Source: Anthoceros angustus
Lineage: Eukaryota > Plantae > Anthocerotophyta
Direction: 5' to 3'
NCBI GenBank assembly: GCA_010909165.1
Contig: VJWM01000204.1
Location: forward strand, 186,001 to 250,000
Length of the DNA stretch: 64,000 nucleotides
Shown: one piece after another, positions 12,211 through 23,949 of the stretch
How the letters are laid out: each line of letters starts with the position of its first letter
How positions within the stretch are numbered: the stretch's first letter is position 1
The notes under the pieces: model-generated
Told to the model about the DNA's origin: nothing
Databases searched by the model: none
What the model saw: only the letters and a program-made list of their open reading frames with translations
Translations under genes and position numbers: made by a program

Positions 12211-15132
12211 ATGGATATGTCCGGCAGTATGCCCATGAAGCACGTCAGGTGAATCGGACGACTACGGTGGACTGGGGTTTTTTTTTTTGTATCCTTCTGC
12301 TAACCACAAGCTGCTCCTTGTTGTTGTAAACACTTCAGGTTTGTGAGGGGCATTTCTTCGTGTAGCAGCGTTTCCAGTCTGAAAGACTTGCCTGAAGAAG
12401 TGCAACTGGACAAGGCTCTCAACATCGTGGACACACTAGGTCAGCGAGGACTTCAGGCTACCGCCCACTCCTTGTATAATCTCCTTCAAGGCTGCATCAG
12501 AAGGAAGGATCTAGCAGCAGGCCGGAGAGTGCAATCCCTTCTATTCAAACAAAAGTTTAACTCGAAGGTTCTGTATCTTGTGCCCAGTCTTATTCAACTA
12601 TTTGCTTCATGTGGCAGTTTGCCAGAAGCAGACCACGTATTCCGCCAAGTTCCACAGCCAAATACACGAACATGGCAGACCATCATTTCGGCACACTCCC
12701 GCTACGGGCAGGGTAAGGAGGCTTTAAGATTATATGAGGAGATGCAACAGGCGGGCGTGGAGCCTAATGAGTTGCTTTATGTTGCCATCCTTAATGCGTG
12801 TGCTAGTACTGGAGCTTTGCAAACTGGGAGAGCAATTCATGAGCAGATGAAAGGACGTGGGTCTGAGTTTAGCGTTCATGTCGGGAACACCCTTGTGGGC
12901 ATGTATGTGAAGTTGAACTGTTTGGATGAGGCCAGGTCAGTGTTTGATGGACTGCACACAAAGAGTATTGTTTCATGGACTACGCTGATTGGAGGATATG
13001 CTCAGCAGGGGAATGGTCAGGAAGCTCTTGCTCTCTTTTGGCAGGTGGAACAGCAAGGAATGCATGCCGACAAGGTTACATATGTAGCCATCCTCAAGGC
13101 ATGTGGAAGCATAGGTGCACTAGACCAGGGGAGGCAGGTTCATGCACAGACTATTGCGAGTGGAGTTGACATGGACTTGCATGTCCAAACCGCCCTAGTT
13201 GACATGTATGCCAAATGCAACAGTACAGATGAGGCAAGGAAGGTGTTTGACGAAATGGCTTCCAAGAGTGTTGTGGTCTGGTCTGCTATGATTGCAGGGT
13301 ATTCTGAGCATGGGAATGGTGAGGAGGCGCTTCACCTGTTCGAGCAAATGCAACAGCAGGGCATCAAGCCGAATGCCATCACATTCCTGAACATCCTCAA
13401 AGCATGTGGGACTGTTGCTGCCTTAGACAAGGGGAGGCAGATACACGCCCAGCTTGTCAAACTTGGGTTCGAACTTGATGTGGTCGTTGGAACCAGCATC
13501 ATTAACATGTATGTGAAATGTGGGAGCTTGGTGGATGCCCAGAAAGTTTTTGATAATTTGCCGGAGAAAGATGTGGTATCATGGAACAGAATGATGGCTG
13601 GCTATGCCCAGCACGGACGCTGGCAAGAAGCTCTTCAAGTACACAAGCAGATGCAAGAGCAGGGCGTGGAGCCTTCTGAAACTACATTTTTGACTCTACT
13701 CAGTGCATGTAGCAGCCTATTGGCTCTCGATCAAGGCAAACAGATTCATGCAGATATCCTGAACGCAGGCTTTCAGGTGAATGCAGTTCTGGGGACGAGT
13801 CTCATAGACATGTATGTGAAATGTGGGAGCATGGATGATGCACGAAAAGTTTTTGCCTTTCTCGATGTAAGGACTGTGGTGTCATGGACGATCATGATTG
13901 GGGGCTATGTTGCGCATGGGCACGGGCAGGAAGCTCTTCGGCTGTTTGCAGCAATGCAACGGGGGGGTGTGAAGCCAGACAAGGTCACTTTTGTAAGCGT
14001 TCTCCGAGCATGTGCTGATACTGCAGCTTTGACGGAGGGCCGGATGATTCATGCATCTGTCACTGAGAGTGGTTACCAGACAGATATCATACTTCAAAGT
14101 GCCCTTGTTGACATGTATGCCAAATGTGGAAGTATGGGCGAGGCACGGGCAGTTTTTGACTCTTCGGCAGAACGAGATGTGGTGTTCTCAAGTGCGATGA
14201 TTGGAGCATATGCTGAGCGCGGTCAGGGTCAGGAAGCCCTTCAACTCTTCCTACAAATGCAACGTGATGGGATTGAACCTAGTGCCAGTACATTTTCGAG
14301 AGTCCTGCAAGCTTGTGCCAGCATAGCAGACCTCACAGATGGTAAAGCAATCCATTCCCAACTTACAGAAACCGGCCTTGATGCAGATGGGCAAATCGGT
14401 AGCTCCCTTGTGAAAATGTACGCTAAGTGTGGGGTTGTTGATGATGCACGGAAAGTGTTCGACACCGTCTTGAGCCCGAGCCGTGATGTAGTGCTGTGGA
14501 ACACTATGATCGCAGCATATGCTCAGCATGGGCGTGCACCAGAGGCTCTCCAACTTTTCCAGCAAATGCAACAGGAGGGTCTAAAGCCCAGCAGTGTGAC
14601 TTTCATCAGCGTACTAACTGCTTGCAGCTACGCAGGCATGCTGGACGAAGGCTCTAGGATCTTCCAAATGATGTCCGACGAGTTCGGCATCATCCCAGCA
14701 ACAGAACACTACGCATGCATGGTGGACATTCTCTGCCGTGCTGGGCATCTGTACGAAGCAAAGGACTTCATCAGCAACATGCCAGTAGAACCTGATGCAG
14801 TGCTGTGGAAGACTGTTCTCACTGGATGCAGAAGTCAGGGCAACGTGGAGCTTGGAAGGCTATGCTTCGATGCTGTCATGAGATTAGATCCCGTTAACTC
14901 TGCTGCATTTATTCTCATGTCAAACATCTACGCTGATGCCGGAAGAAAGGAGGACGAAGCACATATTAGGAAGCGGATGACGGATGCAGGTATCAGAAAG
15001 GAACCAGGACGGACTTGGATTGACATGGACAAAGGTGTCCACACTTTCGTAGCAGAAGACACAAATCATCCCCAAAGAAAGCTCATATATGAGACGTTGA
15101 AAGCCTTGGTACACGTTGGTGAGCCAGGTTGA
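12211..15132 (+). CDS. PLS-class PPR protein ending in E/E+ (no DYW), probable organellar RNA-editing specificity factor; exons 12211-12248, 12339-15132
   Basis: More than 20 P-L-S motifs (LIDMYVKCGS..ARKVFD; VVSWT.MIGGY), E domain HYACMVDILCRAG and E+ KEPGRTWI..VHTFVAEDTNHPQ, then a stop. An in-phase intron 12249-12338 supplies an ATG (MDMSGSMPMKHVRFVRGISS). Confidence 0.93.
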
Positions 15133-15346
15133 TAGTGGGTTGTTCTAAACTATAACCTCATCAGCCAGTGTGCGTTGTCTAAGTGGCAGGATATCAACGG
15201 CACACGTGTCTTGGAAAGATGTCTCCAAATGGCAAAGGGGAAGAGGGAGCTGTGCTCAGTTCCTGAGCTAGGAGAACTCCCCTGCAACAAACGTGTGCTT
15301 CCTGCTCAGCGGTTCTATCAGGAGCGTTCTTGGCACTCGGGACGAG

Positions 15347-16519
15347 ATGGTTCAGGCCAGAGCTATCCTGTGCTTCAGTCTAGGTGCAATCTTGTGGGTT
15401 GAAGTTTGCTGGGCTGCCAGGCCTGGTCCAGCAGGAAGGAACGACACTGCGGGCCTAGCTACAGTCCGCCTGGAACCTCACTACGAGGTCAGGCAGGGAG
15501 TGGAAGTCATCTGGCAGATCCCTCCTAACGTGCGTAGTATTCTTTTCATCGCCCATGGCGTGGGATTCTTTCCCAACAATTTCTGGGACCCCTCGCCTGC
15601 CTGTCCGGTCTGCACAGGCCTGCCGGAAGAGCGCGCCATCACGCTGGCTGCCTTGAGCCGAGGATACGCTGTGATCTCGGTGTCGAGCTTGGGTGAGACG
15701 TGGATGGACTGGCCCCTGCGGACGAATCGAGATTTCTACAATGTGCTCAATATTCTGTCCACTTGGATAGACCAGTTCGGATTAGCGGGCTTGCCTATCA
15801 CTGGTCTGGGGATCTCCGACGGTGGAACATTTCTGTCCATTTTGGCGCTTGAAGTGGACGAATTCGAGTCCATTGTGCTCATGATCTCGTCTGCCAACGA
15901 CGATGCCATCGATTTCGCTGCTCAGGAAGGAGACTACCCGCCCACGCTCTTCATCCAGGTATACACCCACCGTTGTACACCCGTTCTTGGTGTGCTTGGG
16001 GGCACATTGTGCGAGTCTTGTTCTTGATTTCTAACTTTTCTTGAGGTCACGCAGATGCCGAATGACGAGAGCTCCAGGATGAGCATTGCAGAAAACATGC
16101 GAAAGATGTCCGAGGCAGGCATCGTTACAGCAGACATAAAGTGCTCATCTTTCCCTGTCTACGATTCCTACTTCACTGAGAGGATCCCAGGGCTGGATCT
16201 TGACACATCCATCAGAATATTAGAGTCTTTGAAGGCTCACGACTACCTCGACTTCAAGGGGTACATAGTAAGGCCCAATCCTGCTGGTACGGACTGGGAC
16301 GTGTACGAGGACTGGGATTGGGTGGAGGTGGTGCACAAGCTGGGAGTGCTTCCAGTTGAGGGTAATGGTACTGTCAAGTGGGAACAAGCTGTCAGAGAAG
16401 AGCTCAGTCTGGCCTACGCTTTTCACTGTCCAACCAGCCTGAGGAGCACAGAGATGTTAGACTGGCTTGATGGAACAACATGGCCAAAGAAGCCCAACTC
16501 ACTCATTGCGGCCATCTAA
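15347..16519 (+). CDS. Secreted alpha/beta-hydrolase-fold-like conserved plant protein; exons 15347-15958, 16055-16519
   Basis: Signal peptide MVQARAILCFSLGAILWVEVCWA; ILFIAHG, CPVCTGLPEE, nucleophile-elbow-like GISDGG and C-terminal LAYAFH. Confidence 0.78.
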
Positions 16520-16798: not shown

Positions 16799-19700
16799 TT
16801 AGAAAACCAGATCATTGAAGTGCAGCGTTTCTTCTGGTTCCCTGTCTGAATCAGAGTCGGTCAGGAAATCACCTGGTTTCTGGACTGGCTGAGAAGTAAA
16901 CGAATTCTTACGATTGGGTTTGTGAGATTCTTCAAAGCTCGGCAGGTTTGCTGCTTGGCTTGTTGAGCTTACGGCTGCCATTTCTACCTCACTGTCGCCA
17001 TTGGGGATAGTTATTGAAGGTCTGCTGCGCACCTGCGGCGCAGCTTGCATCTCGTGAGAGTTCCGCTCCATTTCTCGACTTGCCCTTCTTCTCTCTACGT
17101 CCTTTCTCATTTCCTCATCTCTCTCATCTTCCAGCTGCTTCCAACTTAAACGTCGTTGTACTTCGTTTTCCAAGGACTGCTTCTTCCTGTCCACTGTAGC
17201 CCTCACCTCCTTATCCCTCTCCGCTTGCTCGTGCTCCCAAGTTTTCAGTGGCCTCCGTATCACCTGCCCTTCCTGCTGTTGAGCGTGTGTATTCCCTTTG
17301 TATCGTTGCAACTCCAGCTCCTTTGTGGCGTGCTCATCTCTCTGTCGTTCTTGTCCAAGTTTCTCTTCACGCTGCTCCCTGGCTTCATCGTCCCGCCGTC
17401 TCTGTTCACTCTCTCTTCTCAGCCTTTGAGCCTCAGAATCTCTCCTTCTTTGTTCTTCTTGGTCTTTTCGTTTCTGTTCCTCAACTACAATGCTATGCAG
17501 GACTCAAGTAAGAACACATCTACCTTCACAAAACTGAGTGGGAACTTGGACAGTCGTCTTACCTGCTCTTTTCTTTTCCATTCCGGAGACCTTGAGTCTT
17601 TGAGCAGCAGCAGTTGTGGCTTTGGTGATAGCACCAGCGATGGTCTCGGTACTTTCGGAGAGTACCGGCTTCATCTCCATAGCAGAAGGTGGGGCAGGCT
17701 TGGAAAGTGAAGGTGGCCTAGGTGTTATGGGGATGACGTCGTAGTCACTTTGTTGTCCAAGATATGACTGTCGCCATCGTGGCCTACTCTGGACATATTG
17801 CTCGGTATGGTCTTCAAGCTGATCCTCTTGATGAACATCTGTGAAGCAAACGTTGGTTGCTCAGGATTGCAGGGCCATTAGCCTACTATTGAACTCAGAG
17901 GAGCAGCACTGTATCTCACCCATGCCTGGGGGCGGCGGCATATGGCCTGAGGGCCCAACAAGTCCAGCAGGAGGACCTGGCTGGAGCTGAACTATGGCTG
18001 TCTGGTGCTTGATCAGCAAGTATGTACATGTCCCCAAAGCTCCCAAAAGAATTACGACCATGCCAGTGGTAAGGCCACTTTCAGGTCGTTTGAACTGCCG
18101 ATTGAACTGCACCATAACAGACATGTTGGGGACACGCAGACAACCACCTAAAACAGAAGATTGCCAACCCGTGAGGCATTCGGAGCAGTCTCGACCAGCA
18201 TACCCTACAAGCAGCACTCCCACATGTTAGAGTCAGTCTATCGGGAGTTCGTAACAGACCGACTGGTGTTGGCGACTGGAAACCCTGGCTTACCAAGGAA
18301 GCAGTCACACTGTCCAGTGGTGTCCATGCAAATGCCTTGCCCTGAACACGTTACATTAGCTCCTGATCCAGGCCTCGTGGCACAAGGGGTCGATACGTAA
18401 GGGCAATCTTGTAGGCAACAAGATGGACTGACTTCTGTGTCTGCACTTTGTCCTGTTACTGTACACCTTTCTCCAATTTCACACAATCCATTGCCACAGA
18501 CTCCAAGTCTTGTCACGTTTGAAACAGACAAAATTTCTGCTCCCGGAAGAATCTGGTTTGCAGCAAATTTGCTATCAAGAGAATCCCAGAGACGATTATC
18601 TTCAAGGGGGTGGAGACTGAAGACATGAAACAACGAGATGGAGGCACCTGATCTTCTTCATCTGATCCCGTACTCGATATCGCTACAAGGTGTGGCACAA
18701 TGTCTGCTTTCCTGATAAGGGGTCTGGAGCTCGTATTCCGCTGTGCCCAAAGTGCATCATCAAGATGAATGTTAGGAGATCTTCAGTTCAGGTACTGCGA
18801 GCTGTGGAAAGTGGAGGTGACAAATAAGCCAACCTCACGATCATCCTCTATCTAAACCTGATAGCAAGTCTGAGCCACAACAGAATTGAAATGATCAAGG
18901 AAAGAGCCTTGCCCAAAAGATCGTACAGCAATAGGAAGAATGTTGAGGACGAATGTCGCGATCCCTGTGAAGATTCCAGCTTGCCCACAGTTTATAGGAT
19001 CGACGTTGCAGTCAGCATTGAGGTTCTGCACTTGCATGTTACTAACAGTGACCGCACTCATCACAAGATTCAGATCAGAGCCCACCTGCAGTACAGTAGA
19101 GGCACGTCAAGCCATTTCCTGTCTTCTTGCCTTGAATCTACAGCAAGGAGATCGTCAACAACGAGTCTTACACTGTTCATCATCTTAGAGGTGAATCCTT
19201 GCCAGCTCTTAAAATCCATCGTCAACGTAGTTGTGAAACCCAATGTAAGTGTGAATGACGCTCCGCAGCTCAAACCGTCTCCATCACAAACATAGCACTC
19301 ATCAAGCAGTCCACTATTGCAGCAGACGCCTTTTTCATCTCTGACCGTGCTGCAGCATTGCAGCAAAGAATCCACAAATCTACCAAGCACGAGGGACATG
19401 TGATCAAGAAACAGCATAACATTCTTGCACTGAAGGGAGCAGACCAAAGTCTGTGCACACTTGGCTTTCCAAGAAATGGTACTTACATGCCTGTGCCATC
19501 GCAGATGCCACATGCATCACGAGACCCGCTTTCGCAGCATTTTCCATTCTGTGGTACAGATGCGTATGACGTCAGAATGCTAGAAGCAAGGTTTAGGACT
19601 CCCCAGTGAAAAGCAATCTGGGTTTTTCAGTGTTACCTTGTCCAACACTGCAGATGCACCTTGACAGCAGCTGAAAGTGGCATCTATTGTTGCACAGCAG

Positions 19701-21540
19701 TTCACGTGTCCAGATGATGTGAAGCCCATCACTCCCAAATACAGTTCACAGAAGTCAGACTTTTCACAGTACCTTCCCTTCCATTCATCAGCACACAGAC
19801 ACCGATTCCCATCCTGACTGACAAGAAAAAGTCACATGGTCAACAACTATTGTATGGCAGCCAGCAAACTTCGAGAGAAGGAACAAGTTTCCGGGCAGGC
19901 TTACCGGACAATAACCATTTCCAGAGCAGTTGTTGAATGCACAGTTACTGCAGTTTAAAAGGGCTGCAGGGCATGGACTGGTGGTCGCGGGTCGGGGAGC
20001 AGCAGGGCAGTTAACATCTGGTGCCACTTTGCCCTTGTCATCTACGCACTGAAATACTGGCGTCAGTGGTTCTAATAAATGCTTATGATGGATCCCGATT
20101 ACACAACTTGTGGAAAATAGCTTTCTGTCTAACCCGGACAGGTTACATTCTGATTTGTTCAAGACAAAGAGGGCGTACCTGTACTAATCTCGAGGAATTG
20201 GATCCGCAAACAGAGGAGCAGTTCGTCCAAGCGCCTGCTAGCCATGTATACGGATGGCAAGGCTGCCAAACACGACAGGACCAAATTTGGTCTACATTCA
20301 CGCAAAAGGACGGCGGTAGCAGACGAGAGACGGAATGCCAACTAGAAGAGCATTGATGAGCACCTGAGAGTTGCAAATTCGTTGAGAAGGAATTCGATCG
20401 CGAGCGAAGCAGGAGCTGTCGCTCACCGCAGATCCATCCACAAGACAATGCACTTGCCTTGTCATAACCCCACCATCACAACGCTTGCTGCAATGGCTCC
20501 AGTCAGATCCATGCCATTTGGGTTTGGAGCAATGATCCATGTTGCAGTACTGGAATTCCGAAACAGTATCTTCGCCACCGCAGTAGGCTGGATCAGCCGT
20601 GTTGCCAAGGCTGTCTATGCAAACAACCTCCCTGTCGAGCAATATCCATACATTTGTCATGGTCTTGCATCCATTGGACAGCTCGGTCTTGCAGCTAGCG
20701 CGGCAGTTGAAAGACCTAGTTTTATTGCACATACAGCTTTCCTACCGGGTCTGAGAGCCGACGTCGCAAGGCTGAGTGCATTCTCCCCACTGGCCTTCAT
20801 ACCACTCATGTTCCGGACAGGGAACTCGGTTGCAGGGCTGCAAGAGGAGAGACTTTTGTGTCACGTTGGGTCTGGTCAGGAGCACTTGGATTTATGGGAA
20901 AGTTAGTGATTGAGCCCAATTGTCACCTGATTCAGTTGAATGAGAGGTAAAAGTGCGCAGTTGGAGGCATCCACTTTCAGAAAGCCGGTTGAGTAGCAGT
21001 CAATCATCGCTCTCTGCACAATGTTCCTGGAAGCATCAGCGCATACCAAAAGGTGGGGCAACGATATTGAAAAACAAGGTGAGCAGAGACGTCTGACCTG
21101 AGTTCCATTGCTGCCACATTTCTGACTGCACGGTCCCCAGGCCGAGGGAGCCCAAAAGGGACCCCAGGGTCTGCTAAACTTGCCGATGGGCGGCACTGGT
21201 GCACTGCAGGGTAGTGCCTCCCATAGAGTGCAGGAACTGCCACTGGAGTTGGTTGCGTTGAGCACTCCGGGCCTGGTGCTGGCGGCGATGCCAAAGTCGA
21301 AGCTCTCGGAATCCGCAGCTGGGCCTGATTAGTGCATCCATGGCAGACCGGTGCATTGCCAAGTTAGCACTAGTTCAGAACATGTGCCTGAGGCGTGGCG
21401 GAAACCCTAGCTGCTCCATGCACCTACCAACCTTGCAGGAACTGGACGGAGGCCACAGCCACACCACAGGTGATCAGATGGAAGCCATGGAGGAATGCTT
21501 GGAGCAGAATCCAGATCTGCAGCAGGACAACGCTGCGCAT
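16799..21540 (-). CDS. Multi-exon type-I membrane protein: signal peptide, 4 ADAMTS-type TSP1 repeats, EGF-like and Cys-rich modules, TM helix, charged cytoplasmic tail
   Basis: ATG at 21540 (MRSVVLLQIWILLQAFLHGFHLITCG). TSP1 repeats WAPSAWGPCSQKCG, WYEGQWGECTQPCDVGSQTR, WHGSDWSHCSKRCDGGVMTRQVHC and WLAGAWTNCSSVCG. EGF-like CSGNGYC and CSGQGICMDTTGQCDCFLGYAGRDC. CC..G..D.CG.CDG repeats. TM GMVVILLGALGTCTYLLI. Stop at 16799. Confidence 0.82.
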
Positions 21541-22129
21541 GCTGATGGTAGGCACGCCCGTCAGGACCGCTCAAGGGACCGTGGGAAGCCAACACTTGGA
21601 GATCGCCATCGCGCCTGCAGGCATTTATACGGCACGGCATCCCGAGCCAGCGCAGTGAAGGTATGAACCAGGCTAGACGTACTCCTCCGCCACAACACCA
21701 CGCCAGGGAACGCAGGAGCCGCTTTAGCTCTGCCACAGCTTGACGGCAGGTAAGGTCGTTACGCCCTATGGTAGTGTCCCACTTCACATGACGCGTCCCG
21801 ACTCCCGCACGTGTCCATTTCCCGCCACCACGCTTAACGGTCTGTGAAACGCTCGAAACGCTCGCTCACTGGCTTGCTTCTTCCCCGTCCTTGGCCGGCC
21901 ATGTCTTGGTCTTGTTGGGAGGAAGTTGAGATCCTGTCCTTGCTCCGCAATCAAAAACCAGAAAACCTGTCCGCCTGCAAGTGCATGCAAGCAATCACCA
22001 TCGCACCGTGCTTGCAATCTTCCAAGACTCTTCCTTCCAGTCGAATTGCACCTGTAGCTGGAGTCTATCAGAGCACGCAGCATGGATTAGAGCTTTGAAG
22101 TGGCCCCGGGGAGAGCACAGCTCCACGGC

Positions 22130-23949
22130 ATGGGGAGCGTGCCGAAGAATGTGAAGGGAAGTGTAGAGTACGTCTGCGGGCTGCTGGCTTCCCTGGGAAT
22201 CGCGGACCTGACTCCCGAGATCATGCGGCAGGCCAAATTCAACTCCAGCGCGGTGGCGGAGTGCCTGCTGCGGGCCATGCACGATCTTATCATCCTCCAG
22301 CTCTCGCAGTTCCCGTCCAAGGTACCAGTGCCGGTGGCTCCCGCTGTTGCCCTAGCTCCAGCTTCGGGCGCTGGGAGGAAGAAGCCGAGCTCCAGGAGCA
22401 GAGGGCCGGGGCCTGGGAGCGGAGGATCCGGGGTAGGAGACGCCAGCAGCGGAGTCGTCAGAGAGACGGAGGTGAAGGCAGCAAGAGCGGTGCTGGACGA
22501 GCTATGGCGGACAGTGGGGAGCCAGGACGGGCCTCCAGACGAGGCCTTGGCGTTTGTGAAGTTCTACCTGGCGGTCTGGGGCTTCCCCCCGCATTCTCCC
22601 ATCTTCACGCTCTCCTTCCCGGCGCAGGAGAGCAGGCACCTGCTGTTGGCGTTGGGATGGCTCGTGTCGCACTGCCGGGCGCTGGAGCGGGGGTTCCAGG
22701 TCCGGATCGAGCCTCTCCTGGCGGCGAGAGCGCTGGCGCCGCTCCCTTCCTACCCCCCGGACGTGGGCTTCACTCCCGAGGCCAGGGCAAAGGGCGAGGA
22801 GGCCAAGGCCAGGGCGGAGGAGCATGTTGCCCGGGTGCTGGCGTCCTTGAACGGGGTCACGGACATCTGCAAGAGAGCAGATGCGCGGGCGCATCAGGCG
22901 CTCATGCTCTACGGAAAGGTGCAGGCCACGTTCAAGTCTCTCTACTCCCTGAGGTGCTGCAAAGCGCGGCGGATGCATGAGCTGAACCTGGCGCAGATCG
23001 AGGCCGGGATCGAGAACACGGACATGATGCTCTTCTCGCAGTATGAGATTTACCTGCTGCAGAACAAGGAGGCGCTGGAGCTGCACATCGGGGCGCTGGA
23101 GGCGGAGAAGAAGATCTCGGAGGAGGTGCAGGAGTACGAGAGGCATGAAGAGTTGTTTTGGGAGTGGATGGAGAGCGTGGTTCTGGAGGCTCAGAAGGAG
23201 GAGTCATTGCAGGAACAGGGTCTTGCCGATGGAAATGGATCAGAGGCGGATTTTGATGTCCGGGGGGTGTCTCCGCAGGAGATGGAGCCGCTCATCCAGT
23301 TTCTGCAGCAAGAGCTGGGTGCGCAAGGTGGTGAGGGTCATACTCCGAGTGTGAGTGTTCCTGAGGGCATACACTTGCTGCCTCCTGACATAGCACAGCG
23401 GTTGAAGGAGAATAGCGAGTCATGTCCTCCGCATGAAGACGCGGCTGACGAGCCCGGGTGTGGGGACGGCCATGAATTGTCCAGGGTTGCATCGCTTGGG
23501 CTTGCGGAGATGCCGTCGTACGTCTACAATCCGGGAAAAATGCAAGGCAGGTCGGATTCAAAAGATCCCGGCCAGTACACTGCAGCTTCGGACAAAATCG
23601 AAGAGTAATGTCGCCCACCGAGATTCAAAAGTTTCCTGTGCGTTTCCTTGCTGTTCAGCTACCCAGTCCTGCTCCACTGACCGGGTACTCGTTGCAGGCT
23701 GACAAACCTTGCTGTAACCCTGGCAAGAGTGCTAGCACGAGTGCGGGCCAGAAACAGGTGAGCTGTTCAAGTCCTTAGTGATGTTCTGCATGTGTCATAT
23801 GTTTAAGTCCTTAGAGTATCTAGCTTGACATGTTTGGAAAATCTGAGTGTGGTAACCCGATCTGGAACCCTCGGGATCCCAGGGCTGTGATTCAGGACAT
23901 CCTCCACCCGCTGATGGAAGACGATAATTATCTGATAGTTGGTCTCTAA
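22130..23949 (+). CDS. TEDC1: Tubulin epsilon and delta complex protein 1-like (centriole triplet microtubules); exons 22130-23604, 23698-23757, 23883-23949
   Basis: TPEIMRQAKFN, SRHLLLALGWL and HEELFWEWMESV correspond to the recalled TEDC1/C14orf80 motifs PEIFRRAKFD, SRELLLALSWL and FWRWM. Two in-phase GT-AG introns lead to TAA at 23949. Confidence 0.78.

What the first reader, a model, noticed from the sequence alone, without database searches (positions are those of the whole stretch)
16799..21540. ADAMTS-type thrombospondin-1/EGF type-I membrane protein in a land plant
Seen: by-eye splicing gives a signal peptide, four WxxxxWxxCSxxCG...R.V.C TSP1 repeats, EGF-like modules, repeated CC..G..D.CG.CDG units, one TM helix and a Pro-rich then Arg/Glu-rich cytoplasmic tail. 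It has many normal short GT-AG introns, so it is an established nuclear gene rather than contamination. Known: TSP1 repeats are typical of animal ECM/adhesion proteins and apicomplexan TRAP adhesins and are not a standard angiosperm receptor domain. Inference: a cell-surface adhesion or recognition protein of an early-diverging plant lineage, possibly for sperm-egg or symbiont contact.
Basis: partly seen in the sequence, partly recalled or inferred. Interest (0 to 1): 0.85.

Follow-up and report, generated by a model that had tools for sequence, protein, structure and literature searches.

The report
Protease-less thrombospondin-repeat membrane protein, land plant
This is a real, intact plant gene for a cell-surface protein built from thrombospondin, EGF and mucin-type (SEA-like) modules usually thought of as animal; it is the protease-less sister of an unstudied family of membrane-anchored proteases found so far in green algae, bryophytes and lycophytes and in no seed plant.

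Summary
On the minus strand, 21540 to 16799, lies an intact gene of 15 exons (about 1049 aa, all introns GT-AG).

- **Architecture:** signal peptide, four ADAMTS-type TSP1 repeats, an EGF, a Cys-rich 'D-x-x-G-x-C-C' repeat module, an SEA-like domain, a Cys-rich stalk plus a second EGF, one TM helix, and a cytoplasmic tail.
- **TSP1 evidence:** one repeat lies within a single exon and passes Pfam TSP1_ADAMTS (46 bits, cutoff 23.8).
- **One gene:** exons 2 to 14 are collinear with single proteins of Selaginella and Diphasiastrum. In liverworts, moss and Klebsormidium the same modules follow an S8 subtilase domain. This gene has none.
- **Distribution:** every named homologue is from the green lineage. 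No seed plant or fern appeared, but the sampling was incomplete.
- **New here:** the SEA-like fold (Z 9.4 to GPR126 SEA, 8.1 to MUC16 SEA); a confidently modelled Cys-repeat module with no PDB or Pfam match; and tail motifs shared with lycophytes (YDVIPITPRPP identical to Selaginella, DFLTDS[DE]SD with Diphasiastrum).
- **Earlier scan note:** the protease-bearing paralogue was noted on another piece of this genome (s1-324613).

The function is inferred: a non-catalytic wall or matrix-binding receptor. The sperm or symbiont idea is untested. No RNA evidence could be obtained.

The parts
21428..21540 (-). Exon 1: start codon (21540-21538) and signal peptide MRSVVLLQIWILLQAFLHGFHLITCGVAVA. The donor is at 21428 or 21432.
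   Evidence: Hydropathy peak at residues 4-30. A divergent + strand gene starts at 22100, so nothing more can lie upstream.
20927..21278 (-). Exons 2-3 (21278-21098, 21013-20927): conserved C-T-L-W...C lead-in and TSP1 repeat 1. An 84-nt intron splits it after CGSNGTQ.
   Evidence: Pfam partial TSP1_ADAMTS, 16.6 bits. tblastn with Marchantia, Calypogeia and Selaginella. Family HMM positions 315-397.
20529..20837 (-). Exon 4 and the start of exon 5: TSP1 repeat 2 (WYEGQWGECTQPCDVGSQT|REVVC). A 114-nt intron splits it.
   Evidence: Pfam partial hit, 19.7 bits. HMM positions 395-427, 34 bits. Exon-wise blastp.
20364..20528 (-). Rest of exon 5: TSP1 repeat 3, contained in a single exon.
   Evidence: Pfam TSP1_ADAMTS 46.1 bits, E 5.9e-12, profile positions 1-53 of 55.
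19971..20262 (-). Exon 6 and the start of exon 7: TSP1 repeat 4 (WLAGAWTNCSSVCGSNSSRLVQ|CVDD...). A 130-nt intron splits it.
   Evidence: tblastn 41-47% identity to four homologues. HMM positions 516-592.
19748..19970 (-). End of exon 7 and start of exon 8: first EGF-like module (NCSGNGYCP|DGNRCLCADEWKGRYC).
   Evidence: Homologues pass Pfam EGF_Teneurin at this position. Collinear alignment.
19262..19747 (-). Rest of exon 8, exon 9 and start of exon 10: Cys-rich repeat module. It has five D-x-x-G-x-C-C units, two of them ending in D-x-C-G-x-C-x-G.
   Evidence: Invariant Cys and Asp columns in 29-33 homologues. Exon 10 scores 69.6 bits against the cassette HMM. The Selaginella module models at pLDDT 88 with no PDB or Pfam match.
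18858..19261 (-). End of exon 10 and exon 11: SEA-like alpha/beta domain. It is inferred by position and by weak homology.
   Evidence: Exon 11 is 35% identical to Diphasiastrum residues 261-320. The equivalent Selaginella region folds as beta-alpha-beta-beta-alpha-beta. It matches GPR126 SEA (Z 9.4) and MUC16 SEA (Z 8.1 and 7.1). Exon 11 does not match the broad family profile.
18648..18740 (-). Optional in-frame 93-nt exon (RNTSSRPLIRKADIVPHLVAISSTGSDEEDQ). Its inclusion is unresolved.
   Evidence: It has phase-0 AG/GT boundaries. Including it would replace the one 305-nt intron with two introns of about 117 and 95 nt. Homologue lengths (107-115 aa between anchors) favour skipping it.
18130..18552 (-). 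Exon 12 and start of exon 13: Cys-rich stalk (GVCGNGLCEIGERC...CCLQDCPY) and the second EGF (CSGQGICMDTTGQCDCFLG|YAGRDCSEC).
   Evidence: Best-conserved part, 62% identical to Selaginella. 129 library hits at E<=1e-3. 90 bits against the cassette HMM. EGF_2 20.3 bits.
18011..18073 (-). Transmembrane helix LTTGMVVILLGALGTCTYLLI.
   Evidence: Hydropathy 2.0. A TM helix follows the cassette in 14 of 15 homologues checked.
17711..17776 (-). Conserved cytoplasmic motif WRQSYLGQQSDYDVIPITPRPP. It contains a YxxPhi-type YDVI and a P-x-T-P.
   Evidence: YDVIPITPRPP is identical in Selaginella. The Diphasiastrum stretch is 58% identical.
17065..17484 (-). Glu/Arg/Lys-rich stretch of the tail: 79 charged residues in 140.
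   Evidence: Composition count. No homologue hit, so it is lineage-specific.
16799..16870 (-). C-terminal acidic cluster DFLTDSDSDREPEE, the last residues, and the stop codon (16801-16799).
   Evidence: 10 of 14 residues identical to Diphasiastrum DFLTDSESDSETLE. Selaginella has YLTDSEDSD.

Best explanation
SHOWN:
- This is an intact 15-exon nuclear gene encoding a type-I membrane glycoprotein of about 1050 aa.
- Domain order: signal peptide, 4 ADAMTS-type TSP1 repeats, EGF, a repeat module of D-x-x-G-x-C-C units, an SEA-like domain, a GVCGNGxCExGE/CCxxDC stalk, EGF, TM helix, cytoplasmic tail.
- It belongs to a green-lineage family. In Klebsormidium, moss and liverworts the same TSR-to-TM part is fused behind an S8 subtilase, giving a membrane-anchored protease.
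- This gene, like its Selaginella counterpart, starts with its own signal peptide and has no protease domain.

INFERRED:
- It relates to the protease-bearing paralogue as ADAMTS-like proteins relate to ADAMTS proteases. That is, it is a non-catalytic cell-surface protein.
- Its TSR, EGF and Cys-rich ectodomain probably binds wall or extracellular-matrix components. It may bind the same partners as the protease.
- The SEA-like-plus-EGF stalk holds the ectodomain off the membrane, as in transmembrane mucins.
- The tail probably directs clathrin-adaptor trafficking through YDVI (YxxPhi) and a CK2-type acidic cluster (DSDSD).
- The biological process (wall sensing, cell-cell adhesion, gamete or symbiont contact) is unknown.
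For: - Gene integrity: (no internal stop, all introns GT-AG).
- TSP1: (46.1 bits). Selaginella homologue P0004: four TSP1_ADAMTS stretches, 101 bits.
- One gene: collinear tblastn to P0004 residues 51-744. Exons 2-14 each hit homologues. The family HMM runs monotonically from position 315 to 1127. A TM helix follows the cassette in 14 of 15 homologues, including uninterrupted ORFs such as the MMETSP transcript P0134 and P0014.
- Family and protease fusion: Pfam Peptidase_S8 plus TSP1 in Marchantia, Calypogeia and Physcomitrium, and in the Klebsormidium protein named 'Subtilisin-related protease with thrombospondin repeats'.
- No S8 here: no tblastn hit anywhere in the 64 kb. A divergent TEDC1 gene lies 560 bp upstream.
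- SEA-like fold.
- Tail motifs conserved between this gene and the lycophyte genes.
- Tree: the gene sits in the land-plant clade (98/97), outside the moss+liverwort S8 clade (96/96).
- An earlier scan note (s1-324613) reports the S8-bearing paralogue elsewhere in this genome.
Against: - There is no RNA evidence for this gene.
- Two splice choices remain open.
- The SEA-like assignment was made on the Selaginella protein. The window's exon 11 matches only Diphasiastrum (35%) and not the broad profile.
- Z 9.4 stands only about 2-3 units above generic ferredoxin-like folds.
- No ligand, localisation or expression data exist for any family member.
- The motif readings (YxxPhi, CK2 cluster) are pattern matches only.
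- The tree leaves hornwort, lycophytes and Setaphyta as a trichotomy. It cannot separate an ancient duplication from independent loss of the protease domain.
- I could not inspect the paralogue myself.
Confidence: 0.6

Rival explanations
1. Gamete-recognition or sperm-surface protein. The ectodomain would mediate sperm-egg or sperm-archegonium contact. The gene would be co-regulated with the basal-body gene next to it.
For: - It lies head-to-head with a TEDC1 (centriole/basal-body) gene, with about 560 bp between the start codons.
- An earlier scan note places a flagellar docking-complex gene a few kb before the window's start.
- Named homologues come from lineages with free-living gametophytes or algae, and none from a seed plant.
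- TSR adhesins serve cell contact in apicomplexans (textbook knowledge).
Against: - There are no expression data.
- The cassette also occurs in Closterium, and Zygnematophyceae have no flagellate cells (textbook knowledge).
- It also occurs in Klebsormidium, Ulva and Bryopsis, with very different life cycles.
- Gene adjacency is weak evidence in a gene-dense genome.
Confidence: 0.12
2. The gene is simply the hornwort orthologue of the membrane subtilase. Its protease exons would have been lost recently or would lie elsewhere (assembly or annotation gap). It would then be a decaying remnant, not a functional protease-less protein.
For: - The tree is compatible with a single-copy species tree: hornwort, Setaphyta and lycophytes as a trichotomy.
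- The Diphasiastrum model is N-terminally truncated, so annotation artefacts do occur in this family.
Against: - The gene has its own ATG and signal peptide directly before TSR1.
- A divergent gene starts 560 bp upstream.
- There is no S8 match in 64 kb.
- The 1049 codons are intact and all 68 Cys are kept.
- Two Selaginella alleles share the same protease-less N-terminus.
- Tail motifs are shared only with the protease-less lycophyte genes.
Confidence: 0.08
3. Foreign DNA: contamination, or recent horizontal transfer from an animal or protist. TSP1, EGF and SEA are typically metazoan modules.
For: The modules are best known from animals. Pfam's best models are ADAMTS and teneurin types.
Against: - The closest relatives are Selaginella and Diphasiastrum, then bryophytes and streptophyte algae.
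- The tree places the gene inside a land-plant clade at 98/97.
- The flanking genes are plant-typical: a PLS-type PPR with E/E+ motifs.
- Its introns and GC content match those of its neighbours.
Confidence: 0.01

Closest known systems
Green-lineage membrane-anchored S8 subtilases with TSP1 repeats, e.g. Klebsormidium nitens 'Subtilisin-related protease with thrombospondin repeats' (P0138), Marchantia OAE28250 (P0010), Physcomitrium P0137, Calypogeia P0012. All are uncharacterised.
   Same: They share the TSR x3-4, EGF, CC-repeat, SEA-like, stalk/EGF and TM part. Conserved exons are 43-74% identical.
   Different: This gene has no Peptidase_S8 domain and none of the domain that follows it in those proteins. 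Its tail carries motifs (WRxSYLG, YDVIPITP, FLTDSDSD) seen only in the protease-less lycophyte genes.
Selaginella moellendorffii EFJ11962/EFJ21096 and Diphasiastrum complanatum KAJ7561289. These are hypothetical 'EGF-like domain-containing' proteins.
   Same: Selaginella has the same protease-less architecture from signal peptide to tail. All parts are collinear. Exon 12 is 62% and 56% identical, and the YDVIPITPRPP motif is identical in Selaginella. They are probable orthologues.
   Different: This gene has an extra Glu/Arg-rich tail segment of about 150 aa and is about 190 aa longer. The tree leaves orthology unresolved.
ADAMTS proteases and ADAMTS-like (ADAMTSL/papilin) proteins of animals
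   Same: Both have ADAMTS-type TSR sequence signatures (W-x4-W-x2-CS-x2-CG), as matched by Pfam PF19030. Both have a protease-bearing and a protease-less family member side by side. The D-x-CGVC-x-GD-x-SC motif resembles the end of the ADAMTS Cys-rich domain.
   Different: The protease partner is a serine subtilase, not an M12B metalloprotease. There is no disintegrin-like, ADAMTS Cys-rich or spacer domain: no Pfam hits, and the ADAMTS5 match is only E 0.006 to 1.7 over about 40 residues. This protein is membrane-anchored, whereas ADAMTS and ADAMTSL are secreted.
Transmembrane mucins (MUC3/12/13/17, MUC16) and other SEA-domain surface proteins (GPR126/ADGRG6, TMPRSS6)
   Same: All have an SEA-type alpha/beta sandwich next to EGF modules just outside a single TM helix (Z 9.4, 8.1, 7.1, 6.9). 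The EGF-SEA-EGF-TM order is that of MUC3/12/13/17 (my own knowledge).
   Different: Pfam SEA does not hit. The Gly-Ser autoproteolysis site is absent, because hydrophobic residues follow the Gly (FTG-IATFV, TG-IVVV). There is no mucin Ser/Thr-rich repeat region.
Apicomplexan TRAP/MIC2-type adhesins
   Same: Both are type-I membrane proteins with extracellular TSRs and an acidic cytoplasmic tail.
   Different: This protein has no vWA domain. Its TSRs are of the ADAMTS subtype. Its tail has no sub-terminal Trp (it ends ...HFNDLVF). There is no relationship beyond the shared TSR module.

Membership tests
TSR superfamily (Pfam TSP1_ADAMTS PF19030 / TSP_1 PF00090) | A profile match above the curated cutoff, with the W...W..CS..CG..G.Q.R...C six-Cys pattern | tested here: met
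   The exon at window 20301-20741 (minus strand) scores 46.1 bits against a cutoff of 23.8. The three other repeats show the motif but are split by introns. The orthologue P0004 has four stretches scoring 101 bits.
ADAMTS / ADAMTS-like family | ADAMTS ancillary core: a central TSR followed by the ADAMTS Cys-rich domain and spacer. ADAMTS proper also has an M12B metalloprotease and a disintegrin-like domain. | tested here: not met
   No Reprolysin, ADAMTS_CR or ADAM_spacer Pfam hit in any exon piece or homologue. The CC module has no structural match. The ADAMTS5 similarity is motif-level only.
Green-lineage TSR-EGF-SEA-TM cassette family (unnamed) | A cassette of about 390 aa with invariant Cys/Asp columns (CC...D.CG.C.G; GVCGNGxCExGE; CCxxDC; EGF), followed by a TM helix | tested here: met
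   Exons 7-10, 12 and 13 hit the cassette HMM at E 5e-05 to 1e-28.
Subtilases (Peptidase_S8) | A catalytic domain with the Asp-His-Ser triad | tested here: not met
   tblastn of the Marchantia and Calypogeia S8-bearing proteins finds no S8 match anywhere in the window. The gene starts with its own signal peptide.
SEA domain (Pfam PF01390) | A ferredoxin-like beta-alpha-beta-beta-alpha-beta sandwich of about 120 aa close to the membrane. Many members autocleave at G|S-V-V-V. | tested here: inconclusive
   The fold matches SEA domains best (Z 9.4, 8.1, 7.1, 6.9, 5.8). That test used the Selaginella orthologue, not the window protein. There is no Pfam SEA hit. No Ser follows the Gly in the equivalent strand.
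EGF-like modules (EGF_2 / EGF_Teneurin) | A six-Cys EGF pattern that passes the profile cutoff | tested here: inconclusive
   The window EGF2 is split by an intron and scores 20.3 bits against a cutoff of 22.1. Homologues pass at the same position with 28.9-31.6 bits. The structural match to the ADAM22 EGF is Z 5.5, rmsd 1.9 A.

The most novel reading that the evidence does not exclude
Non-seed plants and green algae may keep an ancient extracellular-matrix system that parallels animal ADAMTS/ADAMTSL. It would pair a membrane-anchored TSR subtilase with a protease-less TSR/EGF/SEA receptor. Together they would bind and remodel the wall or matrix at the cell surface, for example during gametophyte cell contact, gamete release or symbiont accommodation. 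The system would have been lost in the seed-plant lineage. It would include a previously undescribed disulfide-rich repeat fold, the D-x-x-G-x-C-C module.
Probability: 0.2. Interest if true: 0.8.

Novelty: new variant of a known kind. Interest (0 to 1): 0.58.

Why it matters
TSP1 repeats, SEA domains and EGF stalks are textbook parts of animal cell-surface and matrix proteins, and plant surface biology is described almost entirely without them. This gene shows that a land plant keeps a complete, conserved protein built from these parts. It also shows that the family exists in two forms, with and without a protease, as ADAMTS and ADAMTSL do in animals. The family is absent from all named seed-plant hits. 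I found no paper on it in the held library. It therefore marks a piece of surface machinery that model angiosperms cannot reveal. It is testable in Anthoceros, Marchantia or Physcomitrium. The Cys-repeat module is a candidate new fold.

Tried and rejected
2. Exon-wise search for homologous proteins.
   - One exon found only two short exon-like products from metagenome contigs. One of them, L001, is a 24% GC contig with a collinear, moss-like homologue.
   - Another exon found nothing. This is expected from the tool's length filter.
3. Exact look-up of two exon ORFs in public assemblies: not on record.
4. Hypothesis that the CxVCxGDGxxC module plus the following domain is an ADAMTS Cys-rich/spacer pair. 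Rejected for three reasons:
   - The following domain is alpha/beta and SEA-like, not a spacer jelly roll.
   - The CC module has no PDB match.
   - The sequence match to ADAMTS5 is not significant on its own.
5. Foldseek of the 386-aa model against the PDB gave only weak ferredoxin-like hits. The ESM Atlas shape and feature searches gave nothing usable.
6. Protein comparison failed and local hhalign failed. hmmsearch replaced them.
7. Nine paper searches combined 'thrombospondin' with plant or algal terms or taxa. None found a paper on this family. One was badly framed and uninformative.
All searches used single exons by reference or database homologues. Exons were combined only inside scripts:
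   - In one search they were concatenated to count length, hydropathy and motifs.
   - In one search exon fragments were merged column-wise into the family alignment for the tree (21 clashing columns).

Full report
**Observation**

The window is 51% GC with no N. The gene lies on the minus strand.

I built an exon model from four sources: splice-site enumeration, tblastn of homologues, a family HMM searched against all open pieces, and a consistency check. The model has 15 exons:

| Exon | Window coordinates |
|---|---|
| 1 | 21540-21428 |
| 2 | 21278-21098 |
| 3 | 21013-20927 |
| 4 | 20837-20746 |
| 5 | 20631-20364 |
| 6 | 20262-20179 |
| 7 | 20048-19905 |
| 8 | 19813-19637 |
| 9 | 19548-19487 |
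| 10 | 19379-19172 |
| 11 | 19085-18858 |
| 12 | 18552-18294 |
| 13 | 18204-17920 |
| 14 | 17838-17563 |
| 15 | 17484-16799 |

- All 14 introns are GT-AG. Thirteen are 78-149 nt and one is 305 nt.
- The model gives 1049 codons with no internal stop and 68 Cys.

Two details cannot be fixed without RNA:
- The exon 1/2 junction is either 21428>21278 or 21432>21324.
- An in-frame 93-nt exon at 18740-18648 may or may not be included. Including it would replace the long intron with two ordinary ones. Homologue lengths between the flanking anchors (107-115 aa, against 107 aa without it) argue against inclusion.

**Domains**

- **TSP1 repeats.** Pfam on single exon pieces gives TSP1_ADAMTS at 46.1 bits (E 5.9e-12, cutoff 23.8) for the one repeat contained in a single exon. 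The intron-split repeats give partial hits of 16.6 and 19.7 bits. Four W-x4-W-x2-C motifs are present.
- **EGF.** EGF_2 scores 20.3 bits on the split second EGF (cutoff 22.1).
- **Membrane topology.** Hydropathy shows a signal peptide and one TM helix at window 18011-18073. A third hydrophobic peak (residues 508-527) aligns with a beta-strand of the SEA-like domain in the homologues. It is not a membrane span.

**Relatives**

I ran an exhaustive HMMER search with the best-conserved exon (18241-18657, minus strand). It found 129 representatives at E<=1e-3 and 12 at E<=1e-10.

Every named hit is from the green lineage:

| Group | Taxa |
|---|---|
| Lycophytes | Selaginella, Diphasiastrum |
| Moss | Physcomitrium |
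| Liverworts | Marchantia, Calypogeia |
| Streptophyte algae | Klebsormidium, Chara, Closterium, Chlorokybus |
| Chlorophytes | Cymbomonas, Ulva, Bryopsis |

- No seed plant or fern appeared among about 35 clusters looked up. The remaining hits are unnamed metagenome or run-assembly proteins, so absence is indicated, not proven.
- Pfam on the homologues shows TSP1_ADAMTS x2-5 plus EGF in all long members.
- Marchantia, Calypogeia, Physcomitrium and Klebsormidium carry an N-terminal Peptidase_S8 domain. The Klebsormidium protein is named 'Subtilisin-related protease with thrombospondin repeats' by its depositors.

**One gene, and no protease**

Evidence that the TSR and TM parts form one gene:
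- tblastn of Selaginella P0004 runs collinearly from residue 51 to 744 across the whole locus.
- Exons 2-14 each hit homologues when searched separately.
- The family HMM positions rise monotonically along the gene.
- A TM helix follows the cassette in 14 of 15 homologues. These include uninterrupted ORFs such as the MMETSP transcript P0134 and P0014, which has 1850 aa on a 5.7-kb contig with a signal peptide, five TSRs, the cassette and a TM helix. In relatives, therefore, TSRs and TM share one mRNA.

Evidence that there is no protease domain:
- The S8-bearing queries find no subtilase match anywhere in the 64 kb.
- The gene has its own ATG and signal peptide.
- A divergent gene (Pfam TEDC1, 62.8 bits) starts 560 bp upstream.

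The gene is therefore protease-less, like the two Selaginella alleles. I could not inspect it. If it holds, the two are paralogues.

**Tree**

- A cassette tree of 17 rows places the gene inside a land-plant clade (98/97).
- The gene lies outside the moss+liverwort S8 clade (96/96), beside the lycophyte genes.
- The window row was made by merging exon fragments column-wise.
- The three-way split is unresolved. The tree alone does not separate an ancient duplication from independent loss of the domain.
- The cytoplasmic motifs point to orthology with the lycophyte protease-less genes. WRQSYLG..YDVIPITPRPP has YDVIPITPRPP identical to Selaginella. DFLTDSDSD matches Diphasiastrum DFLTDSESD. No S8-bearing member has these motifs.

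**Structure**

The spliced model has no reference, so I folded the Selaginella orthologue's cassette (P0004:255-640) with a 33-row alignment. The model has mean pLDDT 82 and pTM 0.68.

- **SEA-like domain.** Residues 151-292 form a beta-alpha-beta-beta-alpha-beta sandwich. An all-against-representatives search ranks SEA domains first: zebrafish Gpr126 residues 375-506 (Z 9.4, rmsd 2.7, 101 aligned), MUC16-type SEA (Z 8.1 and 7.1), TMPRSS6 (6.9) and a transmembrane-protease SEA (5.8). Generic ferredoxin-like folds follow at Z of about 6. That Gpr126 residues 375-506 are its SEA domain is from my own knowledge of that structure.
- **Limits of this assignment.** Foldseek alone found nothing significant. 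In the window, the first strand (exon 10 end) matches the profile. Exon 11 matches only Diphasiastrum (35%) and not the broad profile. The assignment to this protein is by position and homology.
- **No autocleavage site.** The Gly in the strand equivalent to the mucin G|SVVV site is followed by hydrophobic residues, not Ser. Autoproteolysis is therefore unlikely.
- **Cys-repeat module.** The module of about 100 aa between EGF1 and the SEA-like domain consists of five D-x-x-G-x-C-C units, two of them ending in D-x-C-G-V-C-x-G. It is nearly invariant in its Cys, Asp and Gly columns and models at pLDDT 88.
- **No known match for that module.** It has no Pfam match in 29 members. No PDB chain reaches Z>=2 among 48,161. 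The best Foldseek E-value is 1.6. A resemblance of its last unit to the ADAMTS5 Cys-rich domain (D-K-CGVCGGDNSSC) is motif-level only: E 0.006 within the large profile and 1.7 alone. Small elongated disulfide modules score poorly in such searches, so 'new fold' is a candidate, not a finding.

**Mechanism**

Shown:
- The domain architecture.
- Membership of the family.
- Absence of the protease domain.
- Conservation of the tail motifs.

Inferred:
- It is a non-catalytic surface protein whose ectodomain binds wall or matrix components.
- It relates to the TSR subtilase as ADAMTSL proteins relate to ADAMTS.
- It has a mucin-like SEA/EGF stalk.
- Its tail is read by trafficking machinery. YDVI fits YxxPhi, DSDSD fits a CK2-type acidic cluster, and PITP fits a proline-directed kinase site. 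All three are pattern matches only.
- The Glu/Arg-rich stretch (79 charged residues in 140) is lineage-specific.

- There is no direct support.
- The TEDC1 neighbour is a weak hint in favour.
- Against a flagella-tied role for the family, a homologous cassette occurs in Closterium. Zygnematophyceae lack flagellate cells (textbook knowledge).

**Literature**

Nine full-text searches combined 'thrombospondin' with plant or algal terms or taxa (land plants, green algae, hornwort, Marchantia, Physcomitr*, Selaginella, Klebsormidium, subtilase). None found a paper describing this family. One paper states that TSRs occur in metazoan surface proteins and notes three Arabidopsis genes of the POFUT2-type GT68 family (PMC3522684). 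The library is incomplete, so 'unstudied' is provisional.

**Limits**

- There is no RNA evidence.
- The joined protein was never submitted to a search or fold tool.
- The species is not identified here. Earlier notes of the scan call it probably a hornwort. Short introns, gene density, the PLS-type PPR neighbour and the tree position are compatible with that.

**Verdict**

The finding is a new variant of a known kind: a TSR-superfamily surface protein with an undescribed domain combination, in plants.

Noticed in passing
window 22100-23605 (+): A 502-aa ORF with Pfam TEDC1 (tubulin epsilon/delta complex protein 1, 62.8 bits), a centriole/basal-body protein. It lies head-to-head with the TSR gene, with about 560 bp between the start codons. 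A basal-body gene in a land plant fits a lineage with flagellate sperm.
   Followed up: partly
window 12343-15129 (+): An intronless 929-aa PLS-type pentatricopeptide-repeat protein with E and E+ motifs. This is the organelle RNA-editing type and a land-plant hallmark.
   Followed up: partly
window 15293-16519 (+): Two consecutive ORFs (244 and 154 aa) with no Pfam hit. They are probably exons of one gene and are convergent with the 3' end of the TSR gene. The first contains a GISDGG stretch that could be hydrolase-like.
   Followed up: no
L001 1-11491 (ENA ERZ25073694 ctg131051, 154381-165871): A metagenome contig of 24% GC carries a collinear homologue (TSR2, TSR3, TSR4, EGF, two CC units). 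Its exon sequences are closest to the Physcomitrium protein, so it is probably a moss genome fragment in an environmental assembly.
   Followed up: partly
window 19583-19831 (-), residues 7-29 of the piece: A sub-threshold Pfam hit to GPR128_N (25.9 bits, cutoff 27.2) on the first EGF-like module. It is curious because the best structural match of the neighbouring domain is the SEA domain of another adhesion GPCR, GPR126. It is probably only EGF-like Cys spacing.
   Followed up: no
window 20364-21278 (-), the four TSRs: None of the four TSRs has the POFUT2 O-fucose consensus C-x-x-(S/T)-C-x-x-G. They read CSQKCG, CTQPCD, CSKRCD and CSSVCG. All four have W-x-x-C, a C-mannosylation-type pattern. 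Some homologues (Selaginella CSKTCG, Marchantia CNRSCG) do fit the O-fucose consensus.
   Followed up: no
Homologues P0027, P0036, P0064 (3700-4800 aa; run assemblies and metagenomes): The same 390-aa EGF, CC-repeat, SEA-like, EGF cassette sits in the middle of giant unnamed proteins of up to 4832 aa. The cassette is therefore a mobile extracellular unit beyond the TSR family.
   Followed up: no
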